From contig JAWMAR010002559.1 of assembly GCA_036785375.1 (NCBI GenBank), forward strand, positions 62,001-125,167: a DNA stretch of 63,167 bases. The letters run 5' to 3'. How positions within the stretch are numbered: position 1 is the first letter of the stretch; each line of letters starts with the position of its first letter. Positions 3,751 to 53,765 of this stretch are shown one piece after another. The DNA is from Leucoraja ocellata (lineage: Eukaryota). The notes below the pieces were generated by a model. That model saw only the letters and a list, made by a program, of their open reading frames with translations. It was not told where the DNA came from and searched no databases. Position numbers and translations under genes: made by a program.

Positions 3751-3779
3751 CCGCTCAGCGTATTCCACCCCCTCGCCAC

Positions 3780-3817
3780 CAAAGCTACTAGTGGAGTAGC
3801 TCCTCTAGTGACTTTGG
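3780..3817. mobile_element. ~38-bp palindromic mini-MITE (hAT-like) inside the Siglec A last exon
   Basis: CAAAGCTACTAGTGGAG-TAG-CTCCTCTAGTGACTTTG(G), flanked by CTCGCCAC (3772-3779) and CTCGTCAC (3818-3825); absent in copy B. Confidence 0.75.
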
Positions 3818-3915
3818 CTCGTCACTGTGCCCGGTGTCTCCGCTGCTCAGCACCTCCCGCATGTTGACGTACACGGCCGATTGCTCTTCCCCCTCTCCCG
3901 ATTCCCCTCCTCCTT

Positions 3916-3957
3916 TCAGCTCCACTGGGGCCGGCCCGTTCTCTCCACTCCCGCACT
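3916..3957 (-). CDS. Siglec-like copy A, last coding exon (short Tyr-free tail SAGVERTGRPQWS*)
   Basis: Acceptor ccctttccttccag; a phase-0 join to the 67-nt exon gives a stop at 3916-3918; the ancestral motif region (AVYVNM, VEYAE) lies downstream out of frame. Confidence 0.65.
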   Translation of the reverse strand, partial: SAGVERTGRPQWS

Positions 3958-4143
3958 CTGGAAGGAAAGGGAAGCAGATGGGCAGTTGTGGGTTTAGTAC
4001 AGAGCAGTGTGGCCCGGCATTTAATACCATCAGCGAGAAGGTTCACAACTCCTGAACTCCCACAGACCCAGGTTCAGCCATGTTGTTTATGTTCTCCTCT
4101 CACACACTCTCACTCTCTCTCCTTCTCTCTCACTCACGTTCTC

Positions 4144-4174
<31 letters not shown>

Positions 4175-4570
4175 CTCTCTCTCTCTCTGCTCTTCCTCTC
4201 TCACACACTCTGTCTCTCACACTCACAGTTTCACACTCTCTCTCTCCCCCTCTTGCACTGTCTTCCTCTCCCAAACATTCTCTCACACTCGCACCCCTCT
4301 CTCACACTACCTCACACTCTCTCACACACACTCATGAGGTTAGATAAATCAATATTCATACCCCCGGTTGCTAAATACTTTAATTCCCCTTCCCACACTG
4401 ACCTTTCTGTCCTCGGTCGCCTCCATTGACAGAGTGAGGCTAAACACAAATTGGAGGACAGCATCACATATTCCACTTGGGCAGCTTACAGCCCAGTGAT
4501 ATGAACATTGATTTCCCTCACTTGAGGTAGCCCTGTATTCCCTCTCTCTCCATCCCTCCCCCACCCAAGT

Positions 4571-5144
4571 AATAATAATAATAATAATAATAATAATCTT
4601 TATTGTCATTGTACAAGGCAACGACATTTTGTTGGAGCAGTCCTCCAGCTGCACAGGAATATGTATAAAAAAGAACTATTAAAAAAATTAGACTCTAAAC
4701 ATATCGTAGTATGGGCGGGTGTGTGAGAGAGAGGGGGGGAATCAGTGTGGGAGGGGGATAGAGTTCAGTAGTGTCACAGCTCTATGGTAGAAGCTGATTT
4801 TTAGTCTTGTCGTGCGGGCGCTCAGTGTCCTGTATCGTCTTCCTGAGGGCAGGGGGGTGAAGAGGCAGTGTCCATGGTGTGTGCTGTCTCTAATGATGCC
4901 CTTGATCCTCCGGATGCTGCAGGGTCCGGTAGATGTCCTCCAGTCTGGGGAGCTGGGTGCCAGTGATACTCTCCGCAGTCTTAATGACGCGTTGGAGAGC
5001 TTTCCTGTTCTCTGCGGTGCAGCCAGATTACCATACTGTGATGCAGTATGTGAGAACTGACTCGATGGCTGACCTGTAGAAGCTCACCAGCAGCTGTTGT
5101 GGGAGACGTGCCCTCTTCAAGCACCTCAGGAAGTGAAGCCTTTG
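4571..5144 (-). mobile_element. Rex1/Babar-type LINE 3' fragment inserted only in arm A
   Basis: Starts QRLHFLRCLKRARLPQQLLVSFYRSAIESVL; (TTA)n tail; AAGT repeated at both junctions; empty site CCCAAGTCGC in arm B (~49130). Confidence 0.75.
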
Positions 5145-5786
5145 AAGTCGCACCAGCTTCTCATTTTCACCCAACAAACCACTAACAGTGGCCTGTTTCC
5201 TTTATCAACGTTACTTTGTTTACATCTATCTTTCATTCATTGTTCTTTATCTCTCTCTACATCATCATCTATATAGAGTCATCCATTGTGGAAACAGGCC
5301 CTTCTGCCCAACTTGCCCACACCGGCCAACATGTCCCAGCTACACTAGTCCCACCTGCCTGCGCTTGGTCCATGTACCTTTCTAACTGTTTCTTAAACGT
5401 TGGGATAGTCCCAGCCTCAACTACCTCCTCCAGCAGCTCGTTCCATACACGCACCACCCTTTGTGTCAAAAAGTTACCCCTCAGATTTTTTTTCCCTTCA
5501 CCTTGAACCTATGTCCTCTGGTCCTCGATTCCCCTACTCTGGGCAAGATCTATTCCTCTCATGATTTTATACACATCTATAAGATCACCCCTCATCCCCC
5601 TGCGCTCCAAGGAATAAAGTCCCAGCCTCCTCAACCTCTCCCTGTAGCTCAGGCCCCTCGAGTCTCGACCGAAACGTCAACTGTTCCTTCTCGTCAGAGA
5701 TTCTGCCTGTTCCACTGAGTTACTCCAGCTTTTTGTACCCACTTTTGTATCATCTGTAGTTGAGATTAAATACAAAGTTCCACTAC

Positions 5787-5853
5787 CTGATTGGTGGCAG
5801 AGTGTGGGCTGTTGATCACATTGGTGTCTTGGTTTCCTGAAGCATCTTCCCTC
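5787..5853 (-). CDS. Siglec-like copy A, first cytoplasmic exon (67 nt, RREDASGNQDTNVINSPHSATNQ)
   Basis: ttctgtttctgcag acceptor and cag|gtagtg donor; phase 2 to 0 matches the TM exon; paralog at 48409-48475. Confidence 0.75.
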
Positions 5854-5949
5854 CTGCAGAAACAGAAGATCACACCAAGTTTACAGCACATCAGCAAAGT
5901 CCAAGTACAAAGTTGCAGTTGTATTAGACGTTGGTCATAAAGTCGTGAG

Positions 5950-7500
5950 GTCATTAATGATAGGAGCAGAATAAGTCATTCGGCCCATCAAGTCTACTCT
6001 GCCATTCAATCATGACTGATCTAACACTTCCTCCTAATCCCATTCTCCTGCCTTTTTCTCCCCATACCCCTGACACCCGTACTGATCAATAACCTATCTA
6101 TCTTTGCCTTAAAAATATCCGTTGACTTGGCCTCCACAGCCTTCTGCAACAAGAAATTCCACAGATTCACCACCCTCTGACTAAAGAAATTCCACTCATC
6201 TGCTTCCTGAAGGAACGTCCTTTAATTCTGAGACTATGTCCTCTAGTCCTAGATTCTTCCACTAGTGGAAACATCCTCCCCACATCCACTCAATCCAAGC
6301 CGTTCACTATTCAGTAGGTTTCAATGCATTTAGAGTATTGTGTTCCGTTCTGGGCACCATATCGTCGGGGAGATGTTGTCAAGCTAGAAAGGGTGCTGAG
6401 AAGATTTACGTGTATGTTGCCAGGATTCGAGGGCTTGAGCTACAGGGAGAGGATGAGCAGGCGGCTTCTCCATTCCTTGGAGCACAGGAGGATGAGGGGT
6501 GATCTTATAGCGGTGTTTAAAATCATGGGAGGAATAGATCGGGTAGACGCACAGAGCATCTTGCCCAGAGTGGGGAATCGTGGAGCAGAGGACAGAGCTT
6601 TAAGTGTGGGGGGGTAGGGGGGGGGGAAAATTCAATAGGAACCTCAGCGCTAACATTTTCACATAAAGGGTAGTGGGTGTATGGAACGAGCTACCGGAGG
6701 AAGTAGTTGAGCCATGGGAGTAATGTTTAAGAAACATTTAGACAGGTACATGGATGGGACAGGTTAGAGGTATATGGACCAAACGCAGGCAGGTGGGACT
6801 AGTGTAGATGGGTCATGTTGGCCGATATGGGCAAGTTGGGCCGAAGGGCCCATTTCCACTGTGTGACAACTACAAACAGGGGCCATTGAGTTTTCCAATT
6901 TCATGTCACTCCTGCACTCCTTTCTCCCCTCTCTCCACCCCACCCCTCCCCCACCCTAGTCATCCTCCTAGTTCCACTGTTCGCATCCTCTATTCCTGTC
7001 TTTAGCACACCTTCCCCAGCCAGCAAAGGGCCATTGTGGGCTCCACCCATCATAAGTTCAAGGAACAGAATTACGCCATTCGGCCCATCAACTCTACTCC
7101 GCAATTCAATCATGGCTGATCCATCTCTCCCTCTTCAACCCCATTCTCCTGCCTTCTCCCTATAACCCTGACTCCCGTACTGATCAAGAACCTATCTATC
7201 TCTGCCTTAACCATATTGATTGGCTTGGCCTCCACAGCCTTCCGTGGCAAAGAATTCCTCAGATTCACCACCCTATGACTGAAAAATTACTCCTCTTCTT
7301 TGTCCTTTAGGTAGTCCTTTAATCCTAAGGCTGTGGCCACTGGTCCCAGAGCTATCCCACTACTTGAAACCTCCTCTCCACATCCACTCTATCCAGGCCA
7401 TTCACTATTCATTACATTTCAAAGAGGTCCCCCCTCATCCTTCTAAACTCCAGCTAGTACAGGCCCAGTAAGTGTCAAACGTTCATCATATGTTAATAAT
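5950..7500. mobile_element. Cluster of CR1 3' fragments (minus ~5950-6320, plus ~6325-6865, minus ~7050-7500)
   Basis: HLEYCVPFWAPY..KLERVLRRFT and CR1 3'UTR signatures. Confidence 0.8.
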
Positions 7501-7532
7501 TCGCGTAAAAATGTGGATTTATTTAAACTTAC

Positions 7533-7632
7533 CGCAGTATATACTTGTAGATGAAGAATCCAGCTAGCACAGCGCTCAGTATTATTATCCCTGTTCTGAG
7601 CAAAACTTGCATCCAAATACTGAAGCTTTTAT
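7533..7632 (-). CDS. Siglec-like copy A transmembrane exon (DKSFSIWMQVLLRTGIIILSAVLAGFFIYKYILR) with an intramembrane Arg
   Basis: gttgttcttacag acceptor, cg|gtaagt donor, 100 nt, phase 1 to 2; hydrophobic stretch followed by KYILRR. Confidence 0.85.
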
Positions 7633-8019
7633 CTGTAAGAACAACCAGAGTTGTGGTTTCAGTTTAATTTATTGTCACGTGTAAACAAGGTACAGTGAAA
7701 GGCTTTTGTGTCGTGCTATCCAGTCAGCGGGAAAGACAACACATGTTTACAATCGAGCTGTCCACAGTGTACAGTTACAGGACAAAGGGAATAACGTTTA
7801 GTGCAAGAAAAAGCCAGCAAAGACCGATCAAAGATAGCCTGAGGATCACCAATGAGGTAGATAGTAGTTCAGGACTGCTCCCTAATTGTGGTAGAATGGT
7901 TCAGTTGCCTGATAACAGCCGTGAAGAAACTGTCCCCGAATCTGGAGGTGTGTGTTTTCACACCAGTGGGCAAGAGGTGCAGATCTCTCTGCCTCTCTCT
8001 CTGCCTCTATCTCTCTGTC

Positions 8020-8980
8020 TCTCTCTCTCCAGTGTTACTCACCGTCCTTCTCTGCTCCAAATTTTGTTCTGATTACAAAAGTTATGAGGTTTAAAAAATC
8101 GTGAGTTCAGCAGATCGGTCTTCTCGCCTGTCAGTCACCATGAAGGTTACGCCCCTTCTGGCACCCGCTGTTAATCATCGGGCGGGGCGAGGAGAATAAA
8201 GCCCTGGAGGCGGGACTGAGTCCTCAACCTGTGCTGATAGAGTCTGCGAGCCTTGCGGAGGAGGGAGACCAACGAAGTGACCAGCGCCCGCTGTGAGTCC
8301 CCATCGCACCCCAACCTTTTCCCCTCTGGTCCTCCTCGCTGGCTCCTTCCCCCCCACCCCCGTAAAACCACACACTCCCCCATGGCTCTTCCCCCCGTCT
8401 TTTCTCTGAGCTCTCTCCCCCCCTGCTCCATACCCCTCCCCTGCCACACACCCCTCCCCAACACCCCACCCATACCCCTCCCTCCCACACCCCCTGCCCA
8501 CACACCCCTCTCCCCAAACCCCCCTCTGCCCACCAATACCCCCCACACACCCCTCACCACCCCACAACCCTTCTCCCCACACACCCTTACCTCCCACACA
8601 CACCCCCCACAATGTCCCTGCCCACCCACCCACACCACAACCCCAGCCCACACACCCCTCTCCCCCACAACCGCCCCTCTCCCCCACAAAATCCCCCCTC
8701 CTCCCACAACCCCCTCCTCTCTCCACACACATACACACTCCCTCCCCCCCACACAACCCCCTCCTCCACAACACCCCCTGCCCCCACACAACCCTCCCCC
8801 AAACCACTCCCTCCCCCTCCCACACCACACCCCCTCCTCCCCCACATTCCTCCTCCTCCCCGCTCAGAAACCCCTCCAGCCCACATACACCCTTTCTCTC
8901 CCACCCCACACCCCCCCCTCAATATCCCCCCCCCCCCCCCCCCCGTGGGACTGAGACCCAATGGTCCCACTTAGTCTAGT
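8020..8980 (+). mobile_element. Putative non-autonomous Helitron-type element with a C-rich interior
   Basis: GTGGGAC...GTCCCAC hairpin (8945-8970) followed by CTAG|T (8976-8980); left boundary uncertain. Confidence 0.45.
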
Positions 8981-9575
8981 TCTTTATGAAAGTCCAGGTA
9001 CACTACATCCACTGGCTCTCCCTTGTCCCTTTTCCTAGTTACATCCTCAAAAAATTCCAGAAGATTAGTCAAGCATCATTTCCCCTTCGTAAATCAATGC
9101 TGACTCGGACCGATCCTGTTACTGCTTTCCAAATATGCCGCAATTTCATCTTTTAGAACTGACTCCAGTATCTTCCCACCACCGATGTCAGGCTAACTGG
9201 TCTATAATTTTTCTCTCTCTTGCCTTTTTTAAAAAGTGGGCGAACATTAGCTACCTCCAATCCCTTCCCTTGTCACCCCTTACTCCCGTTGGAATCATTC
9301 TCCCTCTTTGGAATTAACTGACCCTGCACCTTCTGTATTATTCCCACCTGCCATTGTTGTTCCACTGTCATCCCTGCCAGGGTATTTTTCCAGTCAACTT
9401 TGGCCAGCTCCTCCCTCATGTCTCCATAGTCCTCTTTGTTCAACTGTAATACTGACATTTCTGATTTTCCCTTCTCCCTCTCAAATTGTAGATTAAAACA
9501 TATTGTGGTCATCACCTCGTATTGGTTCCTTTGCCTCAAGTTCCCTTATGAAATCTGGTTCATTACACAACACTA
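8981..9575 (-). mobile_element. CR1 internal ORF2 fragment
   Basis: LNKEDYGDMREELAKVDWKNTLAGMTVEQQWQ; paralog at 44449-45000. Confidence 0.75.
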
Positions 9576-9584
9576 AGGGTATTG

Positions 9585-10135
9585 TGTAATGAGAATGTTG
9601 CCAGCACTGGAGAATTAGACAGGTACACGATGAGGTCAGGTTTGCCGGGGTATGAGCCAAATGCAGGCAGGTGGGACTGGTGTAGGTGCGACATGTTGGT
9701 TGGTGTGGGCAAGTTGGGCCGAAGGGCCTGTTTCCACACGGTATGTGTAGGAGTCATTTATGTTTCAGCCAGCTACTGTTGGCATATTATATTAGTTTGT
9801 CTAGATATTTCTAGCGCTATTATTTTGGACACATAGAGGTGGTCATTTGATGAATGGAGGGGTGTAACACATGGCTTAGTGGACAGGGAGTGATTCAGAC
9901 CAGCTACAGGAGGTGGAGGGAACACAGTTCACACAGATCGGGAGGACAGGAAGTTACAACTTGTATGAGAATAAAGGGAACCTGGTACATTCATCACTTT
10001 GTTTGTACAACTACTTCAATAAAGAATAACTGGAAGATCTGTTCTTTTTTGGTCTGTGTAAGATCACTCCTACTTACCTGTGTAGTAATGGCAATGGAAA
10101 GTTGGACATTGTAAAAGTTAGAAATGGCCATTACA
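9585..10135 (+). mobile_element. Putative solo LTR containing a small CR1 fragment
   Basis: Inverted termini TGTAATG...CATTACA, internal AATAAA (10018-10023), near-matching flanks GTATTG/GTATG. Confidence 0.5.
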
Positions 10136-10183
10136 GTATGCCCCTCTGGCTCTCTGACTTCCCTCGCCCATAAATGTCGTCAC

Positions 10184-10477
10184 CTTCCGTCCACAGATAC
10201 ACCATGAACATGGCTTCCCCGTGCCGGTTTCGGACTGAGCACAAGGCTGTCACATACTCCCCTCCCCCACCCCCTCTCAGAGCGAGGGAGCCATTCACCA
10301 GATGCCCGCTTGCCACCTGCCAGATGTGGAGACGTCCGTGGGTTTGATTTCCGCTGAGGTTGGCGAGGGGGAGGTGACGGGTGAGCTCTCCGGGTGGGTT
10401 GCACCTGGCCGCACACATACAGGTGACACTCTCAGGTGTGTGAGTGCATCCCGAATCCCGGGAAATCTTTGGCGCAT
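10184..10477 (-). CDS. Siglec-like copy A Ig exon 4 (membrane-proximal, MAG domain-5-like)
   Basis: YAPKISRDSGCTHTPESVTCMCAARCNPPGELTRHLPLANLSGNQT...LCSVRNRHG, with the extra-Cys pattern of MAG/Siglec proximal domains; 294 nt, phase 1-1; weak splice sites and an alternative in-frame acceptor at 10486. Confidence 0.75.
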
Positions 10478-10589
10478 CTGGAGGATCTGTCCTATCTGCC
10501 TCCATCACTGCCCTTGGCAGTGTGTTGCGGATGCTCTCCATGGTTAAACAGTTTACCAGGGAGTACAAGTACCTTATACAAATATCACC

Positions 10590-11035
10590 AGTCTGAAGAA
10601 GGTCTCACCCCAAAATGTCACCTATTCCTTCCCTCCAGAGATGCTGCCTGTCCTGTTGAGTTACTCCAGCATTGCAATACCAACCTGATCTCCCAGTGGC
10701 TCAGCACTTCAACTCTTCCTCACATTCCCAATCCGACCTCTCTGTCCTGGGCCTCCTCCATGGCCAGAGTGAGGCCCACCGTAAATTGGAGGAGCAGCAC
10801 CTCATATTTCGCTTGGGCAGTTTACACCCCAGCGGTATGAACATTGACTTCTCTAATTTCAGGTACTCCCTGCTTTCTCCTCTCCTTCCCAGCTCTCCCT
10901 CAGCCCACAGTCTCCTCCTCTTCCTATCTTCTTCCCGCCCCATCCTCCTATCAGTCTGAAGGGTCTCGACCTGAAATGTTGCCTATTTCCTTCACTCCAT
11001 AGAAGCTGCTTCACCCGCTGAGTTTCTCCAGCATT
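10590..11035 (+). mobile_element. Penelope-like element 3' remnant (GIY-YIG C-terminus with terminal repeats)
   Basis: PVAQHFNSSSHSQSDLSVLGLLH..RKLEEQHLIFRLGSLHPSGMNIDFSNF, flanked by CTGAAGAAGG.CTC...GAGATGCTGCC...GAGTTACTCCAGC repeats; related pieces at ~4350-4570, 13770-14280, 18630-18990, 49050-49360. Confidence 0.75.
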
Positions 11036-11084
11036 GTCTGCTCCAGAATTTTGTGTCTATCTATCACGGGACTGATCCAAGAAC

Positions 11085-11680
11085 TCTGAGGCCCTGTACA
11101 AGAAGGGACAGAGCTTTCTGAGAAGGCTCCGCTCCTTCAACATCTGCAGCAAGAAGCTGCAGATGTTCTACTAATCGGTGGTGGCCAGTGCCATCTTCTT
11201 CGCTGCCGTGTGCCGGGGCAACAGGGCGAAGGCTGCGGATGCCAATGGGATCAACAAGCTCATCAGGAAGGCCGGCTCCATCCTGGGGGCGGAGTTGGGT
11301 TCACGGGAGGTTGGTCTTGGAGAGGAGGATGCTCCTCAAACTGTGGAGCATCCTGGACAATACAGCTCACCCCCTCCGTGACACATTGGTCAACCTGAGG
11401 AGCACATTCAGCAACAGACTGGTTCCACCAAGATGCAGCACAGAATGCCACAGGAGATCCTTCTTCCCTGTGGCTATCAAACTGTACAACTCCTCCCCCT
11501 TCTGTCATAGTGTAGACTGAGACTGACTCGCCTCCCCACCACCCCCCTCCCATGTAATCTTTGCACAGCCCCCAAGCCTTTCCACTCGTCATTTTAATTT
11601 CATATTTCAAGTATTTTGTGTTTGTGTATTTTGTGTATTTAGTTCTCTCCTGGGATATATAAAGTTCTATTGTGTCGTAT
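11085..11680 (+). mobile_element. Rex1/Babar-type LINE 3' fragment
   Basis: VVASAIFFAAVC...KLIRKAGS...AHPL...RRSFFPVAIKLYN. Confidence 0.75.
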
Positions 11681-12896
11681 CGTATTGTAAAAGTTGCCCC
11701 GCACATCTCCTTTATAATTTTCCCCTCTCACCTTAAAGCTCTGCCCTCTCAACCTTGACATTTGCACCATGTGAAAAAGATTCTGACTGTCTACCTTCTC
11801 AATGCAACTCATAGTTTTATATATTTCTATCAGGTCTCCCGTCAGCCTTTCAATTGGGTGGTGAATCTGTGGAATTCTTTGCCACAGACGGCAGTGGAGG
11901 CCAAGTCAGTGGTTATATTTACGGCAGAGATAGATGGATTATTGATTAGTACGGGTGTCAGAGGCTATGGGGTGAAGGCAGGGGAAGGGGAGGGAGAAAT
12001 AGATCAGCCATGATCGAATGGCAGAGTAGACTTGATGGGCCGAATGGCCTTATTGTGCTCCCATCACTTATGAACATGAACTCCAGAGAAAGTCTATCCA
12101 ACCTCTTCTTTAGTTTAGTTTAGAGATACAGCGCGGAAACAGGCCCTTCGGCCCACTGTGTCCATGCCTGCCAGCATTCCCGACACATATACTATCCTGC
12201 ACACACTAGTGACAATTTACAAATATACCAAGCCAATTAACCTGCACACCTGTATATCTTTGGAGTGTGGGAGGAAACCGGAGCACCCGAAGAAAACCCA
12301 CGTAGGTTATGGGATGAACTTGCCAACTCCGTACCGACAAGCACCCGTAGTGAGGATTCAACCTGGCTCTCTGGTGCTGTGAGGCAGCAACTCTACTGTT
12401 GAACCACTGTGTGCCCCCCTTAAAACCCCTTATTGGTAATACTCTCTAAACTAGGCAGCGTTGTGCACCCTGACCACATCCTTCCTGTAATGGGGTGACC
12501 AGAACTGCACACAATGCTTCAAATAATTTTATCTAAACTTCCTTATCTTAGAAGAGGAGCGAGGAAATATAGGAAGTATGTTGTCAAGCAGGAAAGGGTG
12601 CAGCGAAGATTCATGAGGATGTGGCCAGGACTAGAGGGCCTGAGCTATAGGGAAAGGTTGAGCAGGCTAGGACTCTCTTCCTTGGAGCGCAGGAGGATGA
12701 GCGGTGATCTTATAGAGGTGTTTAAAAATCATGAGAGGAATAGATCGGGTAGACGCACCAAGTATCTTGCCCAGAGTAGGTGAATCGAGGACCAAAGGAC
12801 ATAGGTTCTAGTGTGTGTGTTAGTGAATTCCAGCATCTCTCATGGACCAATAAACCATTTGCCTTTACATAGACATGACAGTGTGTGGCTACACAC

Positions 12897-13616
12897 ATTC
12901 TACAGTGAGGGTCACATCCCTCTCTGCTGTCCCGTGTTTATTCACCTCCACACACTGATAGACCCCAGCGTCCTTCCCTGTCAGCTGAGGGAATTGAAAA
13001 GACTAGGCTTGTATTCACTGGAGTTTAGAAGGATGAGGGGATATCTTATAGAAACATATAAAATTATAAAAGGACTGGACAAGGTAGATGCATGAAAAAT
13101 GTTCCCAATGTTGGGCGAGTCCAGAACCAGGGGCCATAGTCTTAGAATAAAGGGGAAGCCATTTAAGACTGAGGTGAGAAAAAACTTTTTCACCCAGAGA
13201 GTTGTGAATTTGTGGAATTCCCTGCCACAGAGGGCAGTGGAGGCCAAGTCACTGGATGGATTTAAGAGAGTTAGATAGAGCTCTTGGGGCTAGTGGAGTC
13301 AAGGGATATGGGGAGAAGGCAGGCACGGGTTATTGATTGGGTACGATAAGCCATGATCACAATGAATGGCGGTGCTGGCTCGAAGGGCCGAATAGCCTCC
13401 TCCTGCACCTATTTTCTATGTCTATATCTATGTCCATCCACAGCTCGTTGCTGGAACGTGTTGTGTTCAGTGTGACACCGGGATGTCTCCACGTCAGGTT
13501 AGATGCTGGGAAACTCTGGAGGGAACAGAGGATCGCTGCAGAGTTTCCTTCTTTTATACTGACCCAGGAATTGTTCACATTGTCGGGGGAAGTGATTGAG
13601 AGATTCTGAGCGGCGT
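12897..13616 (-). pseudogene. Siglec-like copy A Ig exon 3 (C2), interrupted by a CR1 insertion
   Basis: 13616-13431 encodes YAAQNLSITSP..IKEGNSAAILCSLQSFPASNLTW..NELWMD; 12992-12897 encodes IPQLTGKDAGVYQCVEVNKHGTAERDVTLTVE; rejoined 282 nt, phase 1-1. Confidence 0.85.
12993..13430 (+). mobile_element. CR1 3' fragment (438 bp) inserted in Siglec exon
   Basis: LKRLGLYSLEFRRMRG-LIETYKI, CR1 3'UTR and CTAT(G/A)T tail abutting exon sequence. Confidence 0.9.
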
Positions 13617-14491
13617 CTGCAAACAGATAACATTCAGCAACCAGTTTTGCGGCACTTTCGTTGATCCTTGTAAAAGACTTTAGTCTTCAGACTTTAGAGA
13701 TCCACTGCAGAAATAGGCCCTACAGCCCACGGAGTCCGCGCCAACCATCGATCACACATTCACACACTAGTTCTATGTTTAGGGAAATGAGAGATATAGA
13801 CAATGGTGTAGAGACATATAGAACAAAGAATGAAAGATATGCAAAAGATTAACGATGATAAAGGGAACAGGCCGTTGTTAGGGGTTTGTTGGGTGAGAAC
13901 AAGAAGCTGATGAGACTTGGGTGGGGGAGGGATGGAGAGAGAGGGAATGCCGGGCTACCTGAAGTTAGAGAAATCAATATACATACCACTGGGCTGTAAA
14001 CTGCCCAAGCAAAATATGAGATGCTGATCCTCCAATTTGCATTTAACCTCACTCTGACAATGGTGGTGTCCGAGGACAGAAAGTTCAGTGTGGGAATGGG
14101 AAGGAGAATTAATGTGTTTAGCAACCAGGAGATCAGGTAGGTCATACATCTCTCTACATCATCGTCTATATCTCTCGTTTCCCTTTCCTGTAACTTTCAG
14201 TCTGAAGAAGGTTCTCGACCCGTCACCCATTCCTTCTCTCCAGAGATGCAGCCTGTCCTGCTGAGTTTCTCCAGCTTTTGGTGTGATTTGATTAGTACGG
14301 GTGTCAGAGGATATGGGGAGAAGGCAGAAGAAAGGGGTTAGGAGAGAGAGATTGATCAGCCATGATTGAATGGCAGAGTAGAGTTGATGGGCTGAATGGC
14401 CTAATTCTGTACCTATCGTCTATGACCTTATATACCAGCGCTGCTAATAGATTGTTGATGTTCCTGCACAATAAACGATCTCCGTACTTAC

Positions 14492-14785
14492 ATTCCACAG
14501 TCAGTGTGAGGGTCTGCTCCGATGACACAGTTGGGTATGTGACTCTGCAGGTGAGGTTTTGCCCGTGATGTTTGAGCGCTGGGGTCAGGGACAGAACAGA
14601 AGTATATGTCAGAGTGTCACCCTGCTGAGTTACGCTGTGTGAGGCTGACGGTGGTACATCAGCGGGGGTGACCCAGGTTAAGGTGGGTGCCGTTCCATCA
14701 CACGTGGTGCTGAAGGAGCAGGTCATGTCCACAGGCTTTCCTGCCACCAATTCAGCAGGGAATATCGTGGGTTTATCCGTGAAAT
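14492..14785 (-). CDS. Siglec-like copy A Ig exon 2 (C2-set)
   Basis: DFTDKPTIFPAELVAGKPVDMTCSFSTTCDGTAPTLTW...TSVLSLTPALKHHGQNLTCRVTY; canonical AG/GTAAGT, 294 nt, phase 1-1; extra Cys typical of Siglec domain 2. Confidence 0.92.
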
Positions 14786-15231
14786 CTAACACACAGAGAA
14801 ACAAATACTGTTAGTTAAATATCACTGGATACATCGGTTCACATCGAAATCCTAGTCCCACACGAGCAAGGATGTTTTTACAAGGTATAGAAGTGTGAAA
14901 ACACACATCTCCAGATTCAGGGACAGTTTCTTCCCAGCTGTTATCAGGCAACTGAATCATCCTACCACAACCAGGGAGCAGTCCTGAACTACTATCTGCC
15001 TCAGCAGAAAGATTGCAATCAAGCCATTTGCAGTGTATGGATACATGATAAGGGAATAACGTTTAGTGCAAGGTAAAGCCAGCAAAGTCCAATCAAGGAT
15101 AGTCCGATGGGTCACCATTGAGGTCAACAGTAGTTCAACACTGCTCTCTGGTTGTGGTAGGTTGGTTCAGTTGCCTGATAACAGCTGGGAGAAACTGTTG
15201 AGTGAATGAGTGAATTATACAGAGCACTTAC

Positions 15232-15597
15232 CAGTAACAGTGAGCTGTGTTACAGGGAGGTAGATGTAATTATTTCCCCTTCTGAATTCAACTCTGAAAA
15301 AATAAGGACCTGCATCTTGCTGCGTGATGTTGTCTATAACCAGGGAACAGTCGTTGTCTTTCAGGATTCCTGACAGCCGGGTCCGATGCTGAAACTTTGT
15401 TGATTCTAGACTGTGATTCCTGGAGTGGAAGGCTACAGAATCTTCGTTGTACGACTCACTGTTAAACCAGATTCCAGTCCGTGGTCTACTGTTCAGTTTC
15501 GACGGGTATGTGTAGTTACATGGAATCCGTGCACACAAACCATTCTGCGCTGTCACAGCTCCGGGAATGTCCGCTCTCCACTTTCCCGACATCACGG
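15232..15597 (-). CDS. Siglec-like copy A V-set exon (sialic-acid-binding domain)
   Basis: W..VTAQNGLCARIPC...DCSLVIDNITQQDAGPYFFRVE: Siglec Cys arrangement and the essential F-strand Arg; canonical splice sites, 366 nt, phase 1-1. Confidence 0.93.
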
Positions 15598-15731
15598 CTG
15601 AGGAGAGAAGGAACAATCTTTAGCAGTGAACACCCTGTCAGTTCACTGGACTTTCCACACCGTTTATCCTGCGTTGTGGACGCGGTGTGAACAGAGCGTA
15701 GAAGAGCAGCATGGTGGCGTAGAGGTAGAGT

Positions 15732-15869
15732 CTCCCTCCTCACCGCCCCTCCCCCAGTGCATCACTCCCACCTCACCGCCCCTCCCCCAGTGCATCACTC
15801 CCTCCTCACCGCCCCTCCCCCATTGCATCACTCCCTCCTCACCGCCCCTCCCCCAGTTCATCACTCCCC
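15732..15869. repeat. 33-bp minisatellite, ~4 copies, in Siglec intron
   Basis: CTCCCTCCTCACCGCCCCTCCCCCAGTGCATCA units. Confidence 0.9.
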
Positions 15870-15900
15870 GTAAACACTTCTGAGTTGCTGCTGATGGTAC

Positions 15901-15940
15901 CTTGGAGAAGGGAGAGGAGGAAGAACGATCTCCCGATCAT
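15901..15940 (-). CDS. Siglec-like copy A start/signal-peptide exon (MIGRSFFLLSLLQ; exon spans 15901-15982)
   Basis: tttctcttccag acceptor at 15983, ATG at 15940, caag|gtacc phase-1 donor matching the V exon. Confidence 0.82.
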
Positions 15941-17166
15941 TGTCCGATCCCAGATATCCCGTCAGTTACCCGATGTCCCGGTCTGGAAGAGAAAGTTATT
16001 GCAGTAAAACTCCAGCGACCAATATACATTAAGCAACATGGATGCAATGCTGAGGCTCTATGAGGAGCTGGTGAGGCCACATTTGGAATATTGTGAGCAC
16101 TTTTGAGCCCTGTATTTGATGAAGGATGTGGTGGCTCTGGAGAGGGTCCAGAGGAGGTTTACAGGAATGGTCCCAGGAATGAGTGTGTTTACATATGAGA
16201 GTGTTTGTCAGCACTGGGTCTGTACTAGCTGGAGTTTAGAAGAATGAGGGAGGACCGCATTGAAACCTACCGAATAGTGAAAGGCTTGGATAGAGTGGAT
16301 GTGGATAGGACTTTTCCACTACTGGCAGGGTCATAGCCTCAGAATTCAACGTTGTTCTAGGAAGGAGATGAGGAGGAATTTCTTTAGTGAGAGGGTGGTG
16401 AATCTGTGGAATTCTTTGCCACAGAAGGCTGTGGCGGCCCAGTCAGTGGATATTGTTGAGGCAGAGAATGATAGATTGTGAATTTGTGCGGGTGTCACGG
16501 GTTATAGGGAGAAGGCAGGAGAATGGGATTAGTAGGCAGAGTTGGATCAGCCATGATTAAAAGGCGGAGTAGATTTGATGGGCTGAATGGCCTAATTCTG
16601 CTCCTATCACATGTCTGTAAATATCACCAAAAGCATACGCTGCACCAACTACATTGAAGCTGTGGTCAATAAAGCAACTGATGTCTCATCTTGCTCAAAA
16701 GATGAAGGAAGTTCAGCATTTCTCCAGTGACTCACACCAACTTCTCCACATGAACTGTGAAAGAACACTGTTAAGTTGCGTTACACTTTGGTTTGGGACC
16801 AGCTCTGCCCAAGACCACAAGAAATTGCTCAGAGCTTAGTTTAGTTTAGAGATACATCACAGAAACAGGCTCCCACGGCCCACAGACCATGCCGACCACT
16901 TCACACACTAGTTCTATGTTTACTTTTTGAGATACAATACGGAAACTGGACCTTTACCCCACCGTGCCCCATCGACCAGCGATCACCCGTTCACACACTA
17001 GTTCTGTGTTTAGTCTAGAGATACAACGTGGAAACAGGCCCTTCGACCCATCGAGTCTGTGCCGACCAACGATCCCCCGCACACTAACACTATCCTACAC
17101 ACGCTAGGGACAATTTACAATGTTGCCAAGCCAATTAGCCTACAAACCTGCATGTCATTGGAATGA

Positions 17167-17710
17167 AGGGGGAAGGAATGTGTGGGGAGGGGTTTGTGGG
17201 GTTGCGTGACTAGGGGGTGTCGTGTGGGTAGGGGAGGGAGTGTGTGTGGGAGGGGGGTGTGGGGGGTGAGTGTGGGGGGTGAGGGTGGGGGGTGAGGGTG
17301 GGGGGTGAGTGCGGTGGGGAAGGGGTGTAGGGAAGGGGGGTGTGTGGGAGTGTTGGGGCGGGGAAGGGTGTGTGTGGTGTGTGGGGGAGGGAGTTTTGGA
17401 AGGTGGGGTGGGGAGGGCGGGTGTAGGGAGGGGGGGTGTGGGGGGAGGGGGGCTGTAGGGGAGGGGGGCTGTAGGGGAGGGGGGTGTAGGGGAGGGGGGG
17501 TGTAGGGGAGGGGGGTGTAGGGGAGGGGGGTGTAGGGGAGGGGGGGTGTAGGGGAGGGGGGGTGTAGGGGAGGGGGGGTGTGGGGGAGGGGGTGTAGGGG
17601 AGGGGGGGTGTAGGGGAGGGGGGGTGTGGGGGAGGGGCTGTAGGGGAGGGGGGTGTGGGGGAGGGGGAGTGTGGGAGGGGGGGTGGGGGAGGGGGAGTGT
17701 TTGAGGGGGG
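17167..17710. repeat. G-rich (GTAGGGGAGGGGG)-type low-complexity tract
   Basis: Directly visible; adjoins a truncated HE1 SINE. Confidence 0.9.
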
Positions 17711-19672
17711 TCAACAGCCCACACTCTGCTGCTTCAGCTTTATTCTCGGCAGCTTCTGGACGGGCGACATCTGAACCGTTTTTGAGCAAATTTAAAAACA
17801 ACACAGAGGGGAAGTGGTCAAGATGAGAGTTTTAGTAATAGTGTAGACAGAAGATAGATTGTATCAGGATGCATCGCAGCTTGCTTTGGGAACAGCTCCA
17901 TCCAACATCGCAACAGGTCCTTCGGCCCACCATGTCCATGCCAGCCCTTTTTTCAGCCCATCTATTGGTCTGATTGTATAATTGCCATGTGTACCAGAAT
18001 TCAGTGTTTGCACGCAACCCAGGCTGGTCGTACTGTATAAGGACATAAGAGATAGGAGCAGAATTAAGCCATTCGGCCCATCAAGTCTGCTCCACCATTC
18101 AACCATGGCCGATATATCTCTATCTCCTAACCCCATTCTCCTGCCTTCTCCCCATAACCTCTGACACCAGTACAAATCAAGAATCTATCCGTCTCAGCCT
18201 TAAATAATCCACTGACTTAGCCTCTACAGTCTACTGTGGCAAAGAATTCCACAGATTCACCACCCTCTGACTGATGATATCCTTCCTCATCTCCTTCCTA
18301 AAAAGAACATCCTTTAATCCTGAGGCTGTAATCTCTAGTCCTAGACTCTCCCACTAGTGGAAACATCCTCTCCACGTTCACTCTATCCAAGCCTTTCATT
18401 ATTCTGTCTGTTCCCCCCTCATTCTTCTAAACTCCAGCGAGTACAGGCCCAGTGCTATCAAACACTCATCATATGTTAACCCACTCATTCCTGGGATCAT
18501 TCATGTAAACCTCCTCTGGACCCTCTCCAGAGCCAGCACATCCTTCCTCAGATATGGGGCCCAAAATTGCTCACAATATTGAGTACAATATATAGTGAGA
18601 GTCATTGGAGAGGGAGACACTGAAATACCTTCACTGTTAGAGTCAGGCCCAACGCAAATTGGGGAACAGCACCTCATATTACGCTTGGGCAACTTACATC
18701 GGTACGATTATCGACTTCTCTAACTTCATAGCCTTGCTTTCCCTCTTTCTCCATCCCTCCCCTTTCCTATTCTACAACCAGTCTGACGTCCCCTTGATTA
18801 AATCTTATCTCTGTTTGCTTCGTTGTCACCTTCTCCTAGCTAACAATGATCTATTCTACATTTTCATCCAACCTCATTCTCTTTGCCTTGTTTTCACACC
18901 TTTCGCTTCCTTATCTCTGTGCCTCCCCCTCACCTGACTTTCAGTCTGAAAGACGCTCGACACGAAACATCACCCATTCCTTCTCTCTGATTCTCAGATT
19001 CGGGGACAGTTTCTGCCCAACTGAATCATCCAACCACAACCAGAGAGCAGCGCTGAACTACTGTCTACCTTTTTGATGACCCTCGGACTATCCTTGATCA
19101 GACTTTGCTGGTTTTACCTTGCACTAAACACTATTCCCCTATCTGTACACTGTAAATGGAACAATTGTAATCATGTGTAGGATGGAACTGCAGATGCTGG
19201 TTTAAACCGGTTAGACACAAAATGCTGGCTTAACTCAACAGGACAGGCAGCATCTCCTGAGAGAAGGAATGGGTTTTCACACCTTACCCTTCCATATCTA
19301 GACTCTGGATAGAAGAAATGGGTGACACTTCAGGTCAAGACGAGATGCTGCTTGTCCCGCTGAGTTACTCCAGCATTTTGTGTCTATCTTTGATTGTAAA
19401 CATGTGTTGTCTTCCCTCTGACTGGTTAGCTTGGAACAAAGGCGTTTCCCTGTAACTCACTGCACGTGACAATAAACTAAACTAAATTCTCCAGAGATGC
19501 TGCTTGTCCCGCTGAGTTACTCCAGCGCTTTGTGTCTATCTTTGGTGTGAACCAGCATCTGCAGTTACCTTAATACACAAAGTATTTCAGTGATCAGACT
19601 CTGCACAAAGTCGCAACTCAGCTGAACTGGTGGTTGTACGTGGGAACGAGCGACAGACACGGAATTACGTAC

Positions 19673-19760
19673 CTGGGTTCTGTCCGCTGGTCAAGTATCG
19701 ACTGACAAACACTCAGGGGGCCAGTGTCCTGATCCTCAGCGGCCGTCACTGTGTGGAGAA
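19673..19760 (-). other. Probable non-coding first exon of Siglec-like copy A
   Basis: Strong donor cccag|gtacgt at 19672 in unique sequence just downstream of ETS motifs; start approximate. Confidence 0.5.
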
Positions 19761-19789
19761 CACAAATGTGTAGAGGGGTAGCTTAGCAT

Positions 19790-19820
19790 CTGAAAACGGA
19801 AGTAAAATAAGGAAGTATTA
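19790..19820. promoter_or_regulatory. Tandem ETS/PU.1-like sites, probable Siglec promoter
   Basis: AAAACGGAAGT (to 19803) and AAAATAAGGAAGT (to 19816) directly upstream of the putative first exon. Confidence 0.45.
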
Positions 19821-47000: not shown

Positions 47001-47274
47001 AGGCCATTTTACCACAATTAGGGAGCAGTCCTGAACTACTATCTACCTCATTGGTGACCATCGGACTATCTTTGATCGGACTTTGCTGGCTTTACCTTGC
47101 ACTAAACGTTATTCCCTTTGTTCTGTATCTGTACACTGTGGACAGCTCGATTGTAATCATGTATTGCCTTTCCGCTGACTGGATAGCACGACACAAAAGC
47201 TTTTCACTGTACCTCGTTACACGTGACAATAAATTAAACTGTAAAAACTGAAAACACACCTCTTGTTTTTACAG

Positions 47275-49932: not shown

Positions 49933-50190
49933 GTGGGAGGATGGAGGGAGGGGTGGTGAGGAGGGAGAGGCGATGGGGAGAGAGCGCTGCACCAGCCTTA
50001 ACTACCTTGGGTTTCATAGATTAATTAACCCTCTGTAGATGAAATAGTGGGATAACATAGAACTAGTGTGTGAACGGATGACCGATGGTCGGTGCGGACA
50101 CGGTGGGCTGAAGGGCCTGTTTCCCCGCTGTATCTCTTTAAAAAAGCCTTTGTTCTTTAGAACCCAGACTGTTCCGCGGGTAAATATTGA

Positions 50191-52812: not shown

Positions 52813-53069
52813 GGGTAACTATTAACATTGACAATAATTGCTTCTATCAAATGATAGTCTGTTAAACAGTCTTTACCTGCAGTTACAAAATCCGCTCGTA
52901 GCTATTAAATATATATTTTGAGAATCCTGTGGGAATTTTGCTAATGCTATTCTGAAGCTCTTGCTCTTGTAGCACCATGTTCTATAACAAGTTTCATAGC
53001 AAGCAGCTTTCTATGTGGCATTGTTGAGTAATAATAATAATGAAATGCAGACGCTGGAAATCTGACAAA

Positions 53070-53765
53070 GGGCGGCACGGTGGCGCAGCGGTAGAGTTGC
53101 TGCCTCACAGCGCCAGAGACCCGGGTTCGATCCTGACTACAGGTGCTGTCTGTGCGGAGTTTGTACGTTCTCCCCGTGACCTGTGTGGGTTTTCTCCGGG
53201 ATCTTCGGTTTCCTCCCACACCCCACAGATGGGCTGGTTTGTAGGTTAATTGGCTTGCTGTAAATGTACATTGTCCCTGCTTACCCAGCACACCACCTCC
53301 ATGTCCCACAGATCGGCAGACTTGGGGTTACTGAACATCCTGCGGTGTAGGCATAAGCTCAGGGGCGACCGTGCCTTTGCGGTTGCAGCTCCGTGACTGT
53401 GGAACAGCATCCCTCTTCCCATCAGAACTGCCCCCTCCATCGACTCTTTTGAGTCGAGAGTTAAAACTCATCTTTACTCTCAAGCCTTTCTTGTCATCCC
53501 CTGAGGGAGGGCTATATGTATGAATTTATGTATGTACTTAATCTATGACCCACTGTTGTATAACGTTAGTACCTCCACCAATGTAAAGCACTTTGGTCAA
53601 CGAGAGTTGTTTTTTAAATGTGCTATAGAAATAAAAGTGACTTGACTTGACTTGACTTGACTTGACTGGGTGTGTGTAGTGTGCGGGGATCGCTGGTCGG
53701 CGCTGACTTGATGGGCCGAAGGTCCTGTTTCCGCGCTGTGTCTCTAAACTACACTAAACTAAAAC
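53070..53765 (+). mobile_element. HE1-like SINE with nested L2 3' end (paralog of 1755-2432)
   Basis: Reverse complement of the arm-A composite. Confidence 0.8.

What the first reader, a model, noticed from the sequence alone, without database searches (positions are those of the whole stretch)
3916..19820. Candidate activating Siglec in a cartilaginous fish, derived from an ITIM-bearing paralog (paired-receptor system)
Seen: a phase-consistent gene SP-V-C2-C2-C2-TM-tail with the Siglec sialic-acid Arg (YFFRVE). Its TM reads VLLRTGIII (AGA at 7595-7597) where the inverted paralog reads VLLTAGII (ACA). When spliced, its tail has no tyrosine motif, whereas the paralog has VIYCPQ, VVYANM and VEYAEL. 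Established: mammalian paired Siglecs (5/14, 11/16) couple an ITIM receptor to an activating one with a basic TM residue, and an Arg near the outer TM end (LxRxG) is the FcR-gamma docking signature of LILRA, GPVI, OSCAR and NKp46. Inference: an independently evolved inhibitory/activating Siglec pair in chondrichthyans, possibly signalling through FcR-gamma rather than DAP12.
Basis: partly seen in the sequence, partly recalled or inferred. Interest (0 to 1): 0.88.

Follow-up and report, generated by a model that had tools for sequence, protein, structure and literature searches.

The report
Skate Siglec gene with degenerate signalling end
A skate sialic-acid-receptor gene keeps an intact binding end, but its membrane and tail exons carry many changes, one of which happens to make it look like an activating receptor, and its supposed partner copy is only a broken tail fragment.

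Summary
The sequence facts mostly hold. A minus-strand Siglec-like gene runs from 15940 to 3916. It has the sialic-acid Arg (YFFRVE), an AGA Arg codon at 7595-7597 inside the predicted membrane helix, and a spliced tail without tyrosine motifs.

The "phase-consistent" gene is damaged, though. The second C2 exon is split by an antisense LINE fragment, and the third C2 exon has lost a Trp that all 49 homologs keep. The tail is cut by a 1-nt deletion.

The "ITIM-bearing paralog" at 47-50 kb has no Ig exons. A 14-nt deletion puts its two distal tyrosine motifs out of frame, so this window holds no receptor pair.

The nearest annotated relative is Amblyraja radiata XP_032870542.1. It shares the LINE insertion but keeps Thr and a full inhibitory tail, so the Arg is a young, lineage-specific change. 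No homolog with this tail type has it.

- The TM exon has diverged no faster than its introns, and pN/pS is not significant.
- Two RNA runs gave no exon reads, which is weak evidence.

My best reading is decay of the 3' signalling module (0.5). A nascent activating receptor remains possible (about 0.27). Sharks do have a conserved Arg-TM, short-tail Siglec class.

First-stage notes on this window and a neighbouring stretch had already touched this gene cluster.

The parts
15901..15940 (-). Signal-peptide exon of gene A (MIGRSFFLLSLLQ plus 1 nt, phase 1; donor AAG|gtacca)
   Evidence: tblastn of the N-termini of P0259, P0237, P0173 and P0159 gives 13 of 13 identical residues. Splice context.
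15232..15597 (-). V-set exon with the sialic-acid Arg (YFFRVE); 366 nt, phase 1/1
   Evidence: Pfam V-set 2.7e-10 and Ig_CD22 1.1e-8. Solved structures: MAG 1.2e-15, Siglec-5 3.9e-13, sialoadhesin 5.5e-13, with the Arg aligned. All 37 positions that are at least 90% conserved in 120 homologs are kept.
14492..14785 (-). First C2 exon (294 nt, phase 1/1), intact
   Evidence: Pfam C2-set_2 1e-9. 93 of 97 residues match P0261 and P0237. 39 of 40 conserved positions are kept.
12897..13616 (-). Second C2 exon, split after ...NELWM by the LINE fragment. Reading on gives an in-frame stop at 13359-13357.
   Evidence: Sequence. Both halves match homologs. 3 of 24 conserved positions are changed in the 5' half.
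12993..13433 (+). 5'-truncated LINE 3' end, inserted antisense to the gene (bounds approximate)
   Evidence: blastn: 12978-13421 is 90% identical to 27385-27826, which lies downstream of an RVT_1 ORF at 26152-27021. Further copies at 57732-58108 and elsewhere. The same insertion is read into by A. radiata P0237, 21 of 23 residues and the same stop.
10184..10477 (-). Third C2 exon (294 nt, phase 1/1); invariant C-strand Trp replaced by Arg (ELTRHL)
   Evidence: 81 of 97 residues match P0244. All 49 homologs have Trp at that column. No Pfam hit for the ORF.
7533..7632 (-). Transmembrane exon (100 nt, phase 1 in, phase 2 out): KSFSIWMQVLLRTGIIILSAVLAGFFIYKYIL, with Arg codon AGA at 7595-7597
   Evidence: Against copy B there are 10 substitutions plus a 3-nt insertion.
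5787..5853 (-). First cytoplasmic exon (67 nt): ...NVINSPHSATNQ, with Tyr to Asn and Cys to Ser in the first tyrosine motif
3916..3957 (-). Last coding exon as spliced at the first AG: SAGVERTGRPQWS, then stop TGA at 3918-3916. A 1-nt deletion just after the acceptor causes the frameshift.
3797..3955 (-). Remnant of the ancestral tail frame (...GEGEEQSAVYVNMREVLSSGDTGHSDE...). It is in frame only from the second AG. The third motif is displaced by an insertion.
   Evidence: One continuous frame matches P0259 and P0261, 43 of 52 residues. VEYAE-like letters lie further downstream in another frame.
47275..47371 (+). Copy B transmembrane exon (Thr where A has Arg)
   Evidence: 31 of 32 residues identical to P0259. 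Sequence.
48409..48475 (+). Copy B first cytoplasmic exon (VIYCPQ)
49755..49932 (+). Copy B last exon, where a 14-nt deletion splits the P0259-like tail over two frames
   Evidence: P0259 residues 55-80 align in frame 3 and residues 84-125 in frame 1. The phase-0 translation has no tyrosine.
44449..55103 (.). Arm of the inverted duplication that matches 1445-9504 (86-94% identity in pieces). It ends inside the intron between the third C2 exon and the TM exon.
   Evidence: blastn.

Best explanation
Gene A is a real member of the large, fast-turning-over Siglec-like (CD33/MAG-type) family of skates. Its ligand-binding half (signal peptide, V domain, first C2 domain) is intact. Its membrane-proximal and signalling half is degenerating.

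The ancestor was an inhibitory receptor like A. radiata XP_032870542.1 (P0261) and XP_032870526.1 (P0259). A LINE fragment had already split the second C2 exon in that ancestor. In the window's lineage the in-frame bypass annotated in A. radiata is out of frame. Transcripts that include the split exon meet a stop inside the LINE. I infer that the exons downstream are no longer held by selection.

Those exons then collected a Trp-to-Arg change in the third C2 exon. The TM exon collected ten substitutions and one extra codon, one of the substitutions being Thr to Arg. The tail collected a Tyr-to-Asn change, a 1-nt frameshift and a further insertion. On this reading the Arg is incidental.

Copy B is a headless, inverted, frameshifted duplicate of a P0259-type TM-plus-tail module, not a receptor.

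Shown here: the lesions, their positions, the shared LINE, and the state of copy B. Inferred: that the 3' exons are unselected and that the Arg has no function.
For: - Lesions sit downstream of the LINE. At family-conserved positions, V plus the first C2 exon show 1 change in 77. The third C2, TM and cytoplasmic exons show 9 in 94 (Fisher p=0.024). Adding the 5' half of the split exon gives 12 in 118 (p=0.017).
- Against P0261, C2a plus the split exon's 5' half differ at 8 of 146 aligned residues. The 3' exons differ at 28 of 181 (p=0.004).
- The invariant Trp is lost; 49 of 49 homologs keep it.
- The split exon reads into a stop at 13359-13357.
- The P0261-type bypass donor is in phase 1 in the window, while its acceptor needs phase 2.
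- TM exon divergence between A and B is 10 of 95 (10.5%), against 2.3-11.4% in five flanking intron segments of 323-641 aligned bases (a sixth, 29 bases long, showed no mismatch).
- pN/pS is 0.126/0.047 from only 10 differences, which is not significant.
- No protein with this tail type carries the Arg: 0 of 3.
- No near-identical protein exists for the V exon; the best is 77%.
- The last exon has zero depth, and no listed exon-to-exon joint appears in two RNA runs.
Against: - The 5' exons have perfect splice sites and no lesion.
- All exons are phase 1/1, so skipping the split exon, or it and the next, stays in frame. The second case gives exactly the V-C2-TM architecture of P0259.
- The only frameshift in C2c, TM and the cytoplasmic exons lies just upstream of the ITIM, and the TM indel is in frame.
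- The premature stop is in the last exon, so by general knowledge it should not trigger mRNA decay.
- Amino-acid changes in TM plus cyt1, polarised with A. radiata proteins, fall about 10 on A and 2 on B. That is my own count from the alignments.
- The A. radiata relative with the same LINE still has an intact TM and tail, so the LINE alone need not disable the gene.
- The 'conserved position' criterion is weaker for the 3' exons (3-4 sequences) than for the 5' exons (49-125 sequences).
- The RNA runs are of coded organisms that may not be the window's species, and nearly all laid reads were repeat fragments.
Confidence: 0.5

Rival explanations
1. One reading: gene A is a young activating-type Siglec. 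It would be expressed as a 2-Ig or 3-Ig form by skipping the LINE-split exon, and possibly the next one. The Arg in the outer third of the membrane helix would dock to the paired aspartates of a zeta/gamma-type ITAM dimer. The tail would have lost all inhibitory tyrosines. It would counterbalance inhibitory relatives of the P0259/P0261 type.
For: - The Arg is inside every best 17-21-residue hydrophobic window, 3-12 residues from the window's N-terminal end.
- A Gln sits four residues before the Arg. This parallels the polar turn above the Arg noted for CD89, QNLIR (PMC13107469, passage read).
- The tail is tyrosine-free with first-AG splicing.
- V and the first C2 exon are intact, with the sialic-acid Arg.
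- The C2a exon is 92-93 of 97 identical to the inhibitory A. radiata proteins.
- TM changes are concentrated on the A lineage.
- Sharks have a conserved Arg-TM, 13-17-residue-tail class in the same family (P0006, P0024, P0246, P0250). An adaptor for such an Arg therefore probably exists in cartilaginous fish.
- An arginine near the top of the TMD is the known contact for gamma/zeta dimers (PMC13107469).
- Paired Siglec-5/14 and Siglec-11/16 are established (PMC8198044, passages read).
Against: - No expression or splicing evidence.
- The Arg is not found in any relative.
- The substitution count in the TM exon is about neutral.
- The Trp loss in the third C2 exon is unexplained unless that exon is skipped too.
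- The V domain is only 76-80% identical to the known inhibitory relatives. Mammalian paired Siglecs have near-identical V domains (recalled, not checked here).
- FcR gamma was reported absent from cartilaginous fish in 2014.
Confidence: 0.27
2. Gene A survives only as a secreted or truncated Siglec (V, C2, part of the next domain) that ends in the LINE, as in the A. radiata isoforms XP_032870550.1 and XP_032870551.1. The 5' half would stay under selection as a soluble lectin or decoy, and the TM and tail exons would be dead weight. This is a special case of the best explanation in which the 5' half still has a function.
For: - P0237 (302 aa) ends by reading into the same LINE.
- 76 of 77 conserved positions are kept in V plus C2a.
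- The lesions are polarised towards the 3' exons.
Against: - P0237 is a prediction, and I could not see its RNA support.
- The divergence from the A. radiata relative is small in C2a and the split exon's 5' half (4-6%). Intact 5' exons could therefore just reflect too little time to decay.
- No reads were laid on the 5' half.
Confidence: 0.15
3. Gene A makes a membrane-anchored, signal-less receptor. The Arg would snorkel to the outer interface, needing no adaptor, and the short tail would simply remove inhibition (a decoy or ligand sink).
For: - The hydrophobic run after the Arg is 16 residues, lengthened by the inserted Ile, and can extend through KYIL.
- The ancestral helix was flanked by a Lys three residues upstream, which A has lost.
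Against: - Sixteen residues is short for a membrane span.
- All best windows include the Arg.
- The same lack of expression evidence applies.
Confidence: 0.06

Closest known systems
Amblyraja radiata XP_032870542.1 'sialic acid-binding Ig-like lectin 13' (P0261), with its short isoforms XP_032870550.1 and XP_032870551.1 (P0237)
   Same: - Same signal peptide.
- C2a 93 of 97 identical; the split exon's 5' half 42 of 44 identical.
- Same LINE insertion at the same site.
- Shares the Met after Trp at the start of the TM exon.
   Different: - It has Thr, not Arg, in the TM, and Trp in the third C2 domain.
- Its tail is intact, with VIYCPH, VVYANL and VEYAEL.
- It has a 2-nt deletion that makes a cryptic C2b-to-C2c splice in frame.
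- Its V domain is only 93 of 122 identical.
Amblyraja radiata XP_032870526.1 'CD33-like' (P0259), an inhibitory-type V-C2-TM receptor
   Same: - Its TM and tail are the template of both copies. Copy B's TM is 31 of 32 identical.
- A's ancestral tail frame is 43 of 52 identical.
- Its 2-Ig architecture equals what gene A would give on skipping two exons.
   Different: It has no basic residue inside the helix and carries two canonical ITIM-type motifs (VVYANL, LEYAEL).
Human paired Siglecs (5/14, 11/16)
   Same: An inhibitory receptor and an activating one that has a basic TM residue and lacks ITIMs (PMC8198044, passages).
   Different: - Those pairs have two complete genes, with near-identical ligand-binding domains kept alike by gene conversion, and DAP12 as adaptor (the first two points are recalled).
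- Here the second copy has no ectodomain, and nothing shows adaptor use.
Receptors with an Arg in the upper TMD that assemble with FcR gamma or zeta dimers (CD89, NKp46, NKp30)
   Same: - The position of the Arg in the N-terminal part of the helix.
- A polar residue one turn above it (PMC13107469, passages).
   Different: - There is no homology of the TM exon to those receptors.
- Association was not tested.
- The gamma chain was not found in cartilaginous fish in a 2014 survey.
Shark Siglec-like proteins with a conserved ...ILGIRA... helix and ...TVKGSRQTV end: XP_072326180.1 (Scyliorhinus torazame), XP_072409577.1 (Chiloscyllium punctatum), XP_041037150.1 and XP_041037231.1 (Carcharodon carcharias)
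   Same: - Same family; they hit the V exon.
- An Arg in the helix, a 13-17-residue tail and no tyrosine motif.
   Different: - A different, unrelated terminal exon that is conserved across three shark species.
- Gene A's Arg sits in an inhibitory-type TM exon and is unique to it.
Unprocessed pseudogenes and gene fragments of birth-and-death immune-receptor clusters
   Same: - A transposon in a coding exon, a frameshift, loss of an invariant core residue, and a headless duplicated fragment nearby.
- Neighbours in the cluster with similar notes (s1-884876, s1-885020).
   Different: The 5' half shows no lesion at all.

Membership tests
Siglec (sialic-acid-binding Ig-like lectin) | N-terminal V-set domain with the conserved Arg on the F strand | tested here: met
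   Pfam V-set and Ig_CD22. The Arg of YFFRVE aligns with the Arg of MAG and Siglec-5.
Siglec (sialic-acid-binding Ig-like lectin) | Family-conserved residues of the V domain, including the Cys pattern | tested here: met
   37 of 37 positions that are at least 90% conserved in 120 homologs are kept.
Siglec (sialic-acid-binding Ig-like lectin) | One or more intact C2-set domains after the V domain | tested here: met
   The first C2 exon is intact (C2-set_2 1e-9). The second is split by a LINE and the third lacks its Trp.
Siglec (sialic-acid-binding Ig-like lectin) | Binding of sialylated glycans | not testable with these tools
   Needs a binding assay.
Activating partner of a paired immunoreceptor | Basic residue inside the membrane helix | tested here: met
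Activating partner of a paired immunoreceptor | Short tail without ITIM or ITSM | tested here: met
   Met if the first AG (3958) is used. The second AG, 2 nt on, would restore AVYVNM.
Activating partner of a paired immunoreceptor | A complete inhibitory partner with a closely similar ectodomain in the same genome | tested here: not met
   Not met within the window. Copy B has no Ig exons and its tail is frameshifted. The rest of the genome could not be read.
Activating partner of a paired immunoreceptor | Transcribed and spliced into an mRNA containing the TM exon | tested here: inconclusive
   No exon depth and no listed exon joints in two RNA runs of coded organisms. No near-identical protein in the collections.
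Activating partner of a paired immunoreceptor | Association with an ITAM adaptor through the basic residue | not testable with these tools
   Needs co-expression.
Activating partner of a paired immunoreceptor | Conservation of the basic residue in orthologs or paralogs | tested here: not met
   0 of 3 proteins with this tail type. No family protein matching this TM exon has it.
Unprocessed pseudogene or decaying gene | Disabling lesion in a coding exon | tested here: met
   LINE in exon 13616-12897 with an in-frame stop. 1-nt deletion in the last exon.
Unprocessed pseudogene or decaying gene | Neutral pattern of substitution | tested here: inconclusive
   TM exon divergence is 10.5% against 2.3-11.4% in the introns. 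pN/pS is 2.7 from 10 differences. The 5' exons look constrained, or are too young to have decayed.
Unprocessed pseudogene or decaying gene | No functional transcript | tested here: inconclusive
   same limits as above.

The most novel reading that the evidence does not exclude
Gene A is an inhibitory-to-activating conversion caught early in a skate. A single Thr-to-Arg change, remodelling of the outer half of an inhibitory-type membrane helix, and three separate losses of tail tyrosines would turn a P0261-like inhibitory Siglec into an adaptor-coupled one. It would be expressed by skipping the LINE-split exon, and it would be independent both of the mammalian pairs and of the older shark Arg-TM class.
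Probability: 0.25. Interest if true: 0.65.

Novelty: new member of a known kind. Interest (0 to 1): 0.35.

Why it matters
If the activating reading were right, it would show the route by which inhibitory immune receptors turn into activating ones: one charged residue plus tail loss. That route would be operating in cartilaginous fish, independently of mammals, with the ancestral state still readable in a sister species.

As things stand, the locus mainly illustrates birth-and-death turnover in a very large, essentially undescribed chondrichthyan Siglec-like family. My searches found no paper on that family.

The stronger lead for activating Siglecs in cartilaginous fish is the conserved shark Arg-TM, short-tail class seen in passing.

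Tried and rejected
**Ig exons for copy B.** I looked with the four Ig ORFs of gene A, with 12 homologs and with 259 family proteins. None turned up between 20 and 47 kb. Outside the exon set, the only hits were the signal-peptide exon and two transposon-related stretches.

**Signal peptide.**
- My first model (MLLFYALFTP at 15712, as in P0008) is kept only as a possible alternative start. The canonical exon at 15940 fits better.
- My first acceptor for the third C2 exon (10493) was replaced by 10477 after comparison with P0244.

**Which last-exon frame is ancestral.** Distant tails gave an ambiguous answer. P0259, P0244 and P0261 settled it.

**Positive selection on the TM exon.** Not demonstrable from 10 differences.

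**RNA.** The run search found no holder on record as RNA.
- The one reads call (3780-9770; X21 and X24 RNA, X1 and X2 probably DNA) gave almost only repeat fragments. For X21, 1603 of 1652 laid reads lay only partly on the stretch; for X24, 3166 of 3254.
- Depth was zero over 3780-4179.
- None of the 15 listed joints lay at an exon border, but 116 joints were not shown.

**Other searches.**
- A search for near-identical short proteins of the V exon found one protein at 77% identity.
- The earlier-findings search by sequence was blank, which means nothing.
- Literature on FcR gamma or DAP12 in sharks gave nothing relevant.
- Supplementary files were not consulted. The genome list behind the 2014 statement on the gamma chain may be in them.

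**Assembly artefact.** I considered this as the origin of the inverted copy and rejected it as unlikely. The arms differ by 2-11% and by several indels.

Full report
**What is there.**

On the minus strand lies a Siglec-like gene with eight exons:
- signal peptide, 15940-15901
- V, 15597-15232
- first C2, 14785-14492
- second C2, 13616-12897
- third C2, 10477-10184
- transmembrane, 7632-7533
- first cytoplasmic exon, 5853-5787
- last exon, from 3957

The Ig exons are all phase 1/1. The TM exon leaves in phase 2 and the first cytoplasmic exon in phase 0. The signal-peptide exon was found by homology: MIGRSFFLLSLLQ is identical in 13 of 13 residues to the N-termini of four skate proteins. The window has no N.

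**Identity.**

The V exon matches Pfam V-set (2.7e-10) and Ig_CD22 (1.1e-8). Among solved structures its best matches are MAG (1.2e-15), Siglec-5 (3.9e-13), sialoadhesin, Siglec-8 and CD33, and the Arg of YFFRVE aligns with their sialic-acid Arg.

A scan of 1.84 billion representative proteins gave 1107 hits at E of 0.001 or better, 28 of them at 1e-30 or better. A word-indexed search gave 154 proteins at 1e-20 or better. The named ones among the 120 listed are from sharks, rays and skates, annotated as Siglec-5/6/8/10/12/13, CD33-like or MAG-like. The closest are from Amblyraja radiata.

**The observation.**

The Arg codon AGA at 7595-7597 is real, and the other copy has ACA. The first tyrosine motif reads VINSPH instead of VIYCPQ. 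Spliced at the first AG (3958), the last exon reads 13 residues and stops at 3918-3916, because one base is missing just after the acceptor. The third motif is pushed away by a further insertion.

There is a caveat. An AG two bases further on (a GAG, normally the weaker choice; general knowledge) would restore the frame ...GEGEEQSAVYVNM....

The second C2 exon is cut after ...NELWM by about 440 bp. This insert is 90-93% identical to other copies in the window, one of which lies downstream of an RVT_1 reverse-transcriptase ORF. It is inserted antisense, and reading on meets a stop at 13359-13357.

The third C2 exon reads ELTRHL where all 49 aligned homologs have Trp.

**Copy B.**

Blastn shows an inverted duplication of 1445-9504 onto 55103-44449, which ends in the intron upstream of the TM exon. 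No V or C2 exon exists between 20 and 47 kb.

The tail of P0259 aligns to B's last exon in two different frames. B lacks 14 bases that A and the A. radiata proteins have. In the canonical phase-0 frame B therefore reads on without any tyrosine.

The "ITIM-bearing paralog" is thus a headless fragment that keeps only VIYCPQ in frame. Its TM peptide is 31 of 32 identical to P0259, whereas A shares a Met with P0261. B looks like the 3' end of a P0259-type neighbour rather than a copy of A.

**Nearest relatives.**

A. radiata XP_032870542.1 (P0261, 471 aa) sits in the same 90% cluster as XP_032870550.1/XP_032870551.1 (P0237, 302 aa), on the same 13.4-Mb contig as P0259 and P0008. Gene A compares with them as follows:

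| Exon | Identical residues | Compared with |
|---|---|---|
| First C2 | 93 of 97 | P0261 |
| 5' half of the split exon | 42 of 44 | P0261 |
| Third C2 | 64 of 74 | P0261 |
| TM | 22 of 32 / 24 of 32 | P0261 / P0259 |
| First cytoplasmic | 20 of 22 | P0261 |
| Ancestral tail frame | 43 of 52 | P0261 |
| V | 93-97 of 122 | P0261 and others |

The last 23 residues of P0237 match the window at 13480-13412 in a shifted frame (21 of 23) and end at the same stop inside the LINE's terminal repeat. The insertion is therefore shared.

P0261 keeps Trp in the third C2 domain, Thr in the helix, and all three tyrosine motifs. Its model bridges the LINE by a cryptic donor in the split exon and a cryptic acceptor in the next exon. 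In the window those two sites are in phases 1 and 2, so the bridge would be out of frame. The Arg and the tail lesions are thus younger than the LINE and private to the window's lineage.

**Function or decay.**

For decay:
- Changes at family-conserved positions are 0 of 37 in V and 1 of 40 in the first C2 exon. They are 3 of 24 in the split exon's 5' half, 1 of 31 in the third C2 exon, 2 of 16 in TM, 1 of 15 in cyt1 and 5 of 32 in cyt2.
- Comparing upstream with downstream gives 1 of 77 against 9 of 94 (p=0.024). The downstream criterion rests on only 3-4 sequences.
- The TM exon differs from B at 10 of 95 aligned bases, and five flanking intron segments of 323-641 aligned bases differ by 2.3-11.4%.
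- pN/pS is 0.126/0.047 from 9 nonsynonymous differences and 1 synonymous one. That cannot reject neutrality.
- Only three proteins in 5.8 billion clusters carry this tail type, and none has the Arg.

For function:
- The 5' exons and all splice sites are clean.
- Skipping one or two exons stays in frame and gives architectures that the family uses, such as P0018 and P0259.
- The Arg lies within every best hydrophobic window.
- The amino-acid changes of the TM exon fall almost all on A.

RNA gave nothing either way. No holder is on record as RNA. In two RNA runs of coded organisms the laid reads were repeat fragments, depth over 3780-4179 was zero, and none of the 15 listed joints sat at an exon border, with 116 joints not shown.

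**Known biology.**

Paired Siglecs with a basic TM residue and DAP12 are established (PMC8198044, passages). An arginine near the top of the helix contacts the aspartate pair of gamma or zeta dimers in CD89, and is assumed to do so in NKp46 and NKp30 (PMC13107469, passages). A 2014 survey found no gamma chain in cartilaginous fish (PMC4016189, abstract and passages), though it predates most chondrichthyan genomes.

Within the family itself, four proteins from three shark species end in a conserved Arg-bearing helix with a 13-17-residue tail and no tyrosine motif. Activating-type Siglec-like receptors therefore probably already exist in cartilaginous fish, on a different terminal exon. My searches found no paper on chondrichthyan Siglec expansions or activating forms.

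**Verdict.**

The pair claimed for this window does not exist. The Arg-plus-short-tail architecture is real but young, unique and unsupported by expression, and it sits among other lesions of the 3' half.

I put decay of the signalling module at 0.5. That includes the variant where the 5' half lives on as a truncated product. I put a nascent activating receptor at about 0.27. Junction-level RNA data from this species, and the TM exons of orthologous loci, would decide.

Noticed in passing
proteins P0006, P0024, P0246, P0250 (not in the window): Four Siglec-like proteins from three shark species (Scyliorhinus torazame, Chiloscyllium punctatum, Carcharodon carcharias) share a conserved C-terminal module. 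It has an Arg inside the helix (...ILGIRA...), a 13-17-residue tail ending ...TVKGSRQTV, and no tyrosine motif. This looks like a conserved activating-type class.
   Followed up: partly
proteins P0261 and P0237 (A. radiata), compared with window 13479 and 10404: The A. radiata model bridges the LINE-split exon by joining a cryptic donor in the second C2 exon to a cryptic acceptor inside the third, which makes a hybrid Ig domain. A 2-nt deletion puts this in frame there. In the window it would be out of frame.
   Followed up: partly
window 15732-15868 and 3011-3750: A 33-bp minisatellite (4.2 copies, 95% matches) lies in the intron between the signal-peptide and V exons. A long C-rich array with a related unit (...CCTCACCGCCCCTCCC...) lies just downstream of the last exon. 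Similar G- or C-rich arrays lie at 8428-8846 and 17212-17700.
   Followed up: no
window 15712-15682: A second possible start (MLLFYALFTP, good Kozak context) lies inside the first intron. It matches the N-terminus of A. radiata XP_032870539.1 (P0008). Its donor is weak.
   Followed up: partly
window 22067-22358 and 35421-35781: A second inverted pair (94% identity) lies closer to the centre of the window. The inverted arrangement may therefore extend beyond the TM and tail arms.
   Followed up: no
window 26152-27826, 25372-26346, 20032-21155, 28567-29958, 32086-33039: The space between the two copies is filled with retroelement remains: an RVT_1 ORF, a weak zf-RVT hit, and an ORF hitting ALKBH8_N. 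A 317-aa ORF at 32086-33039 has no Pfam match.
   Followed up: partly
window 49822-49839 and 3878-3895 region: Both copies in this species have Met at +3 of the middle motif (VYANM, VYVNM), where A. radiata has Leu (VVYANL). This changes a canonical ITIM into a YxNM-type motif. The reading of YxNM as a Grb2/PI3K-type site is recalled, not tested.
   Followed up: no
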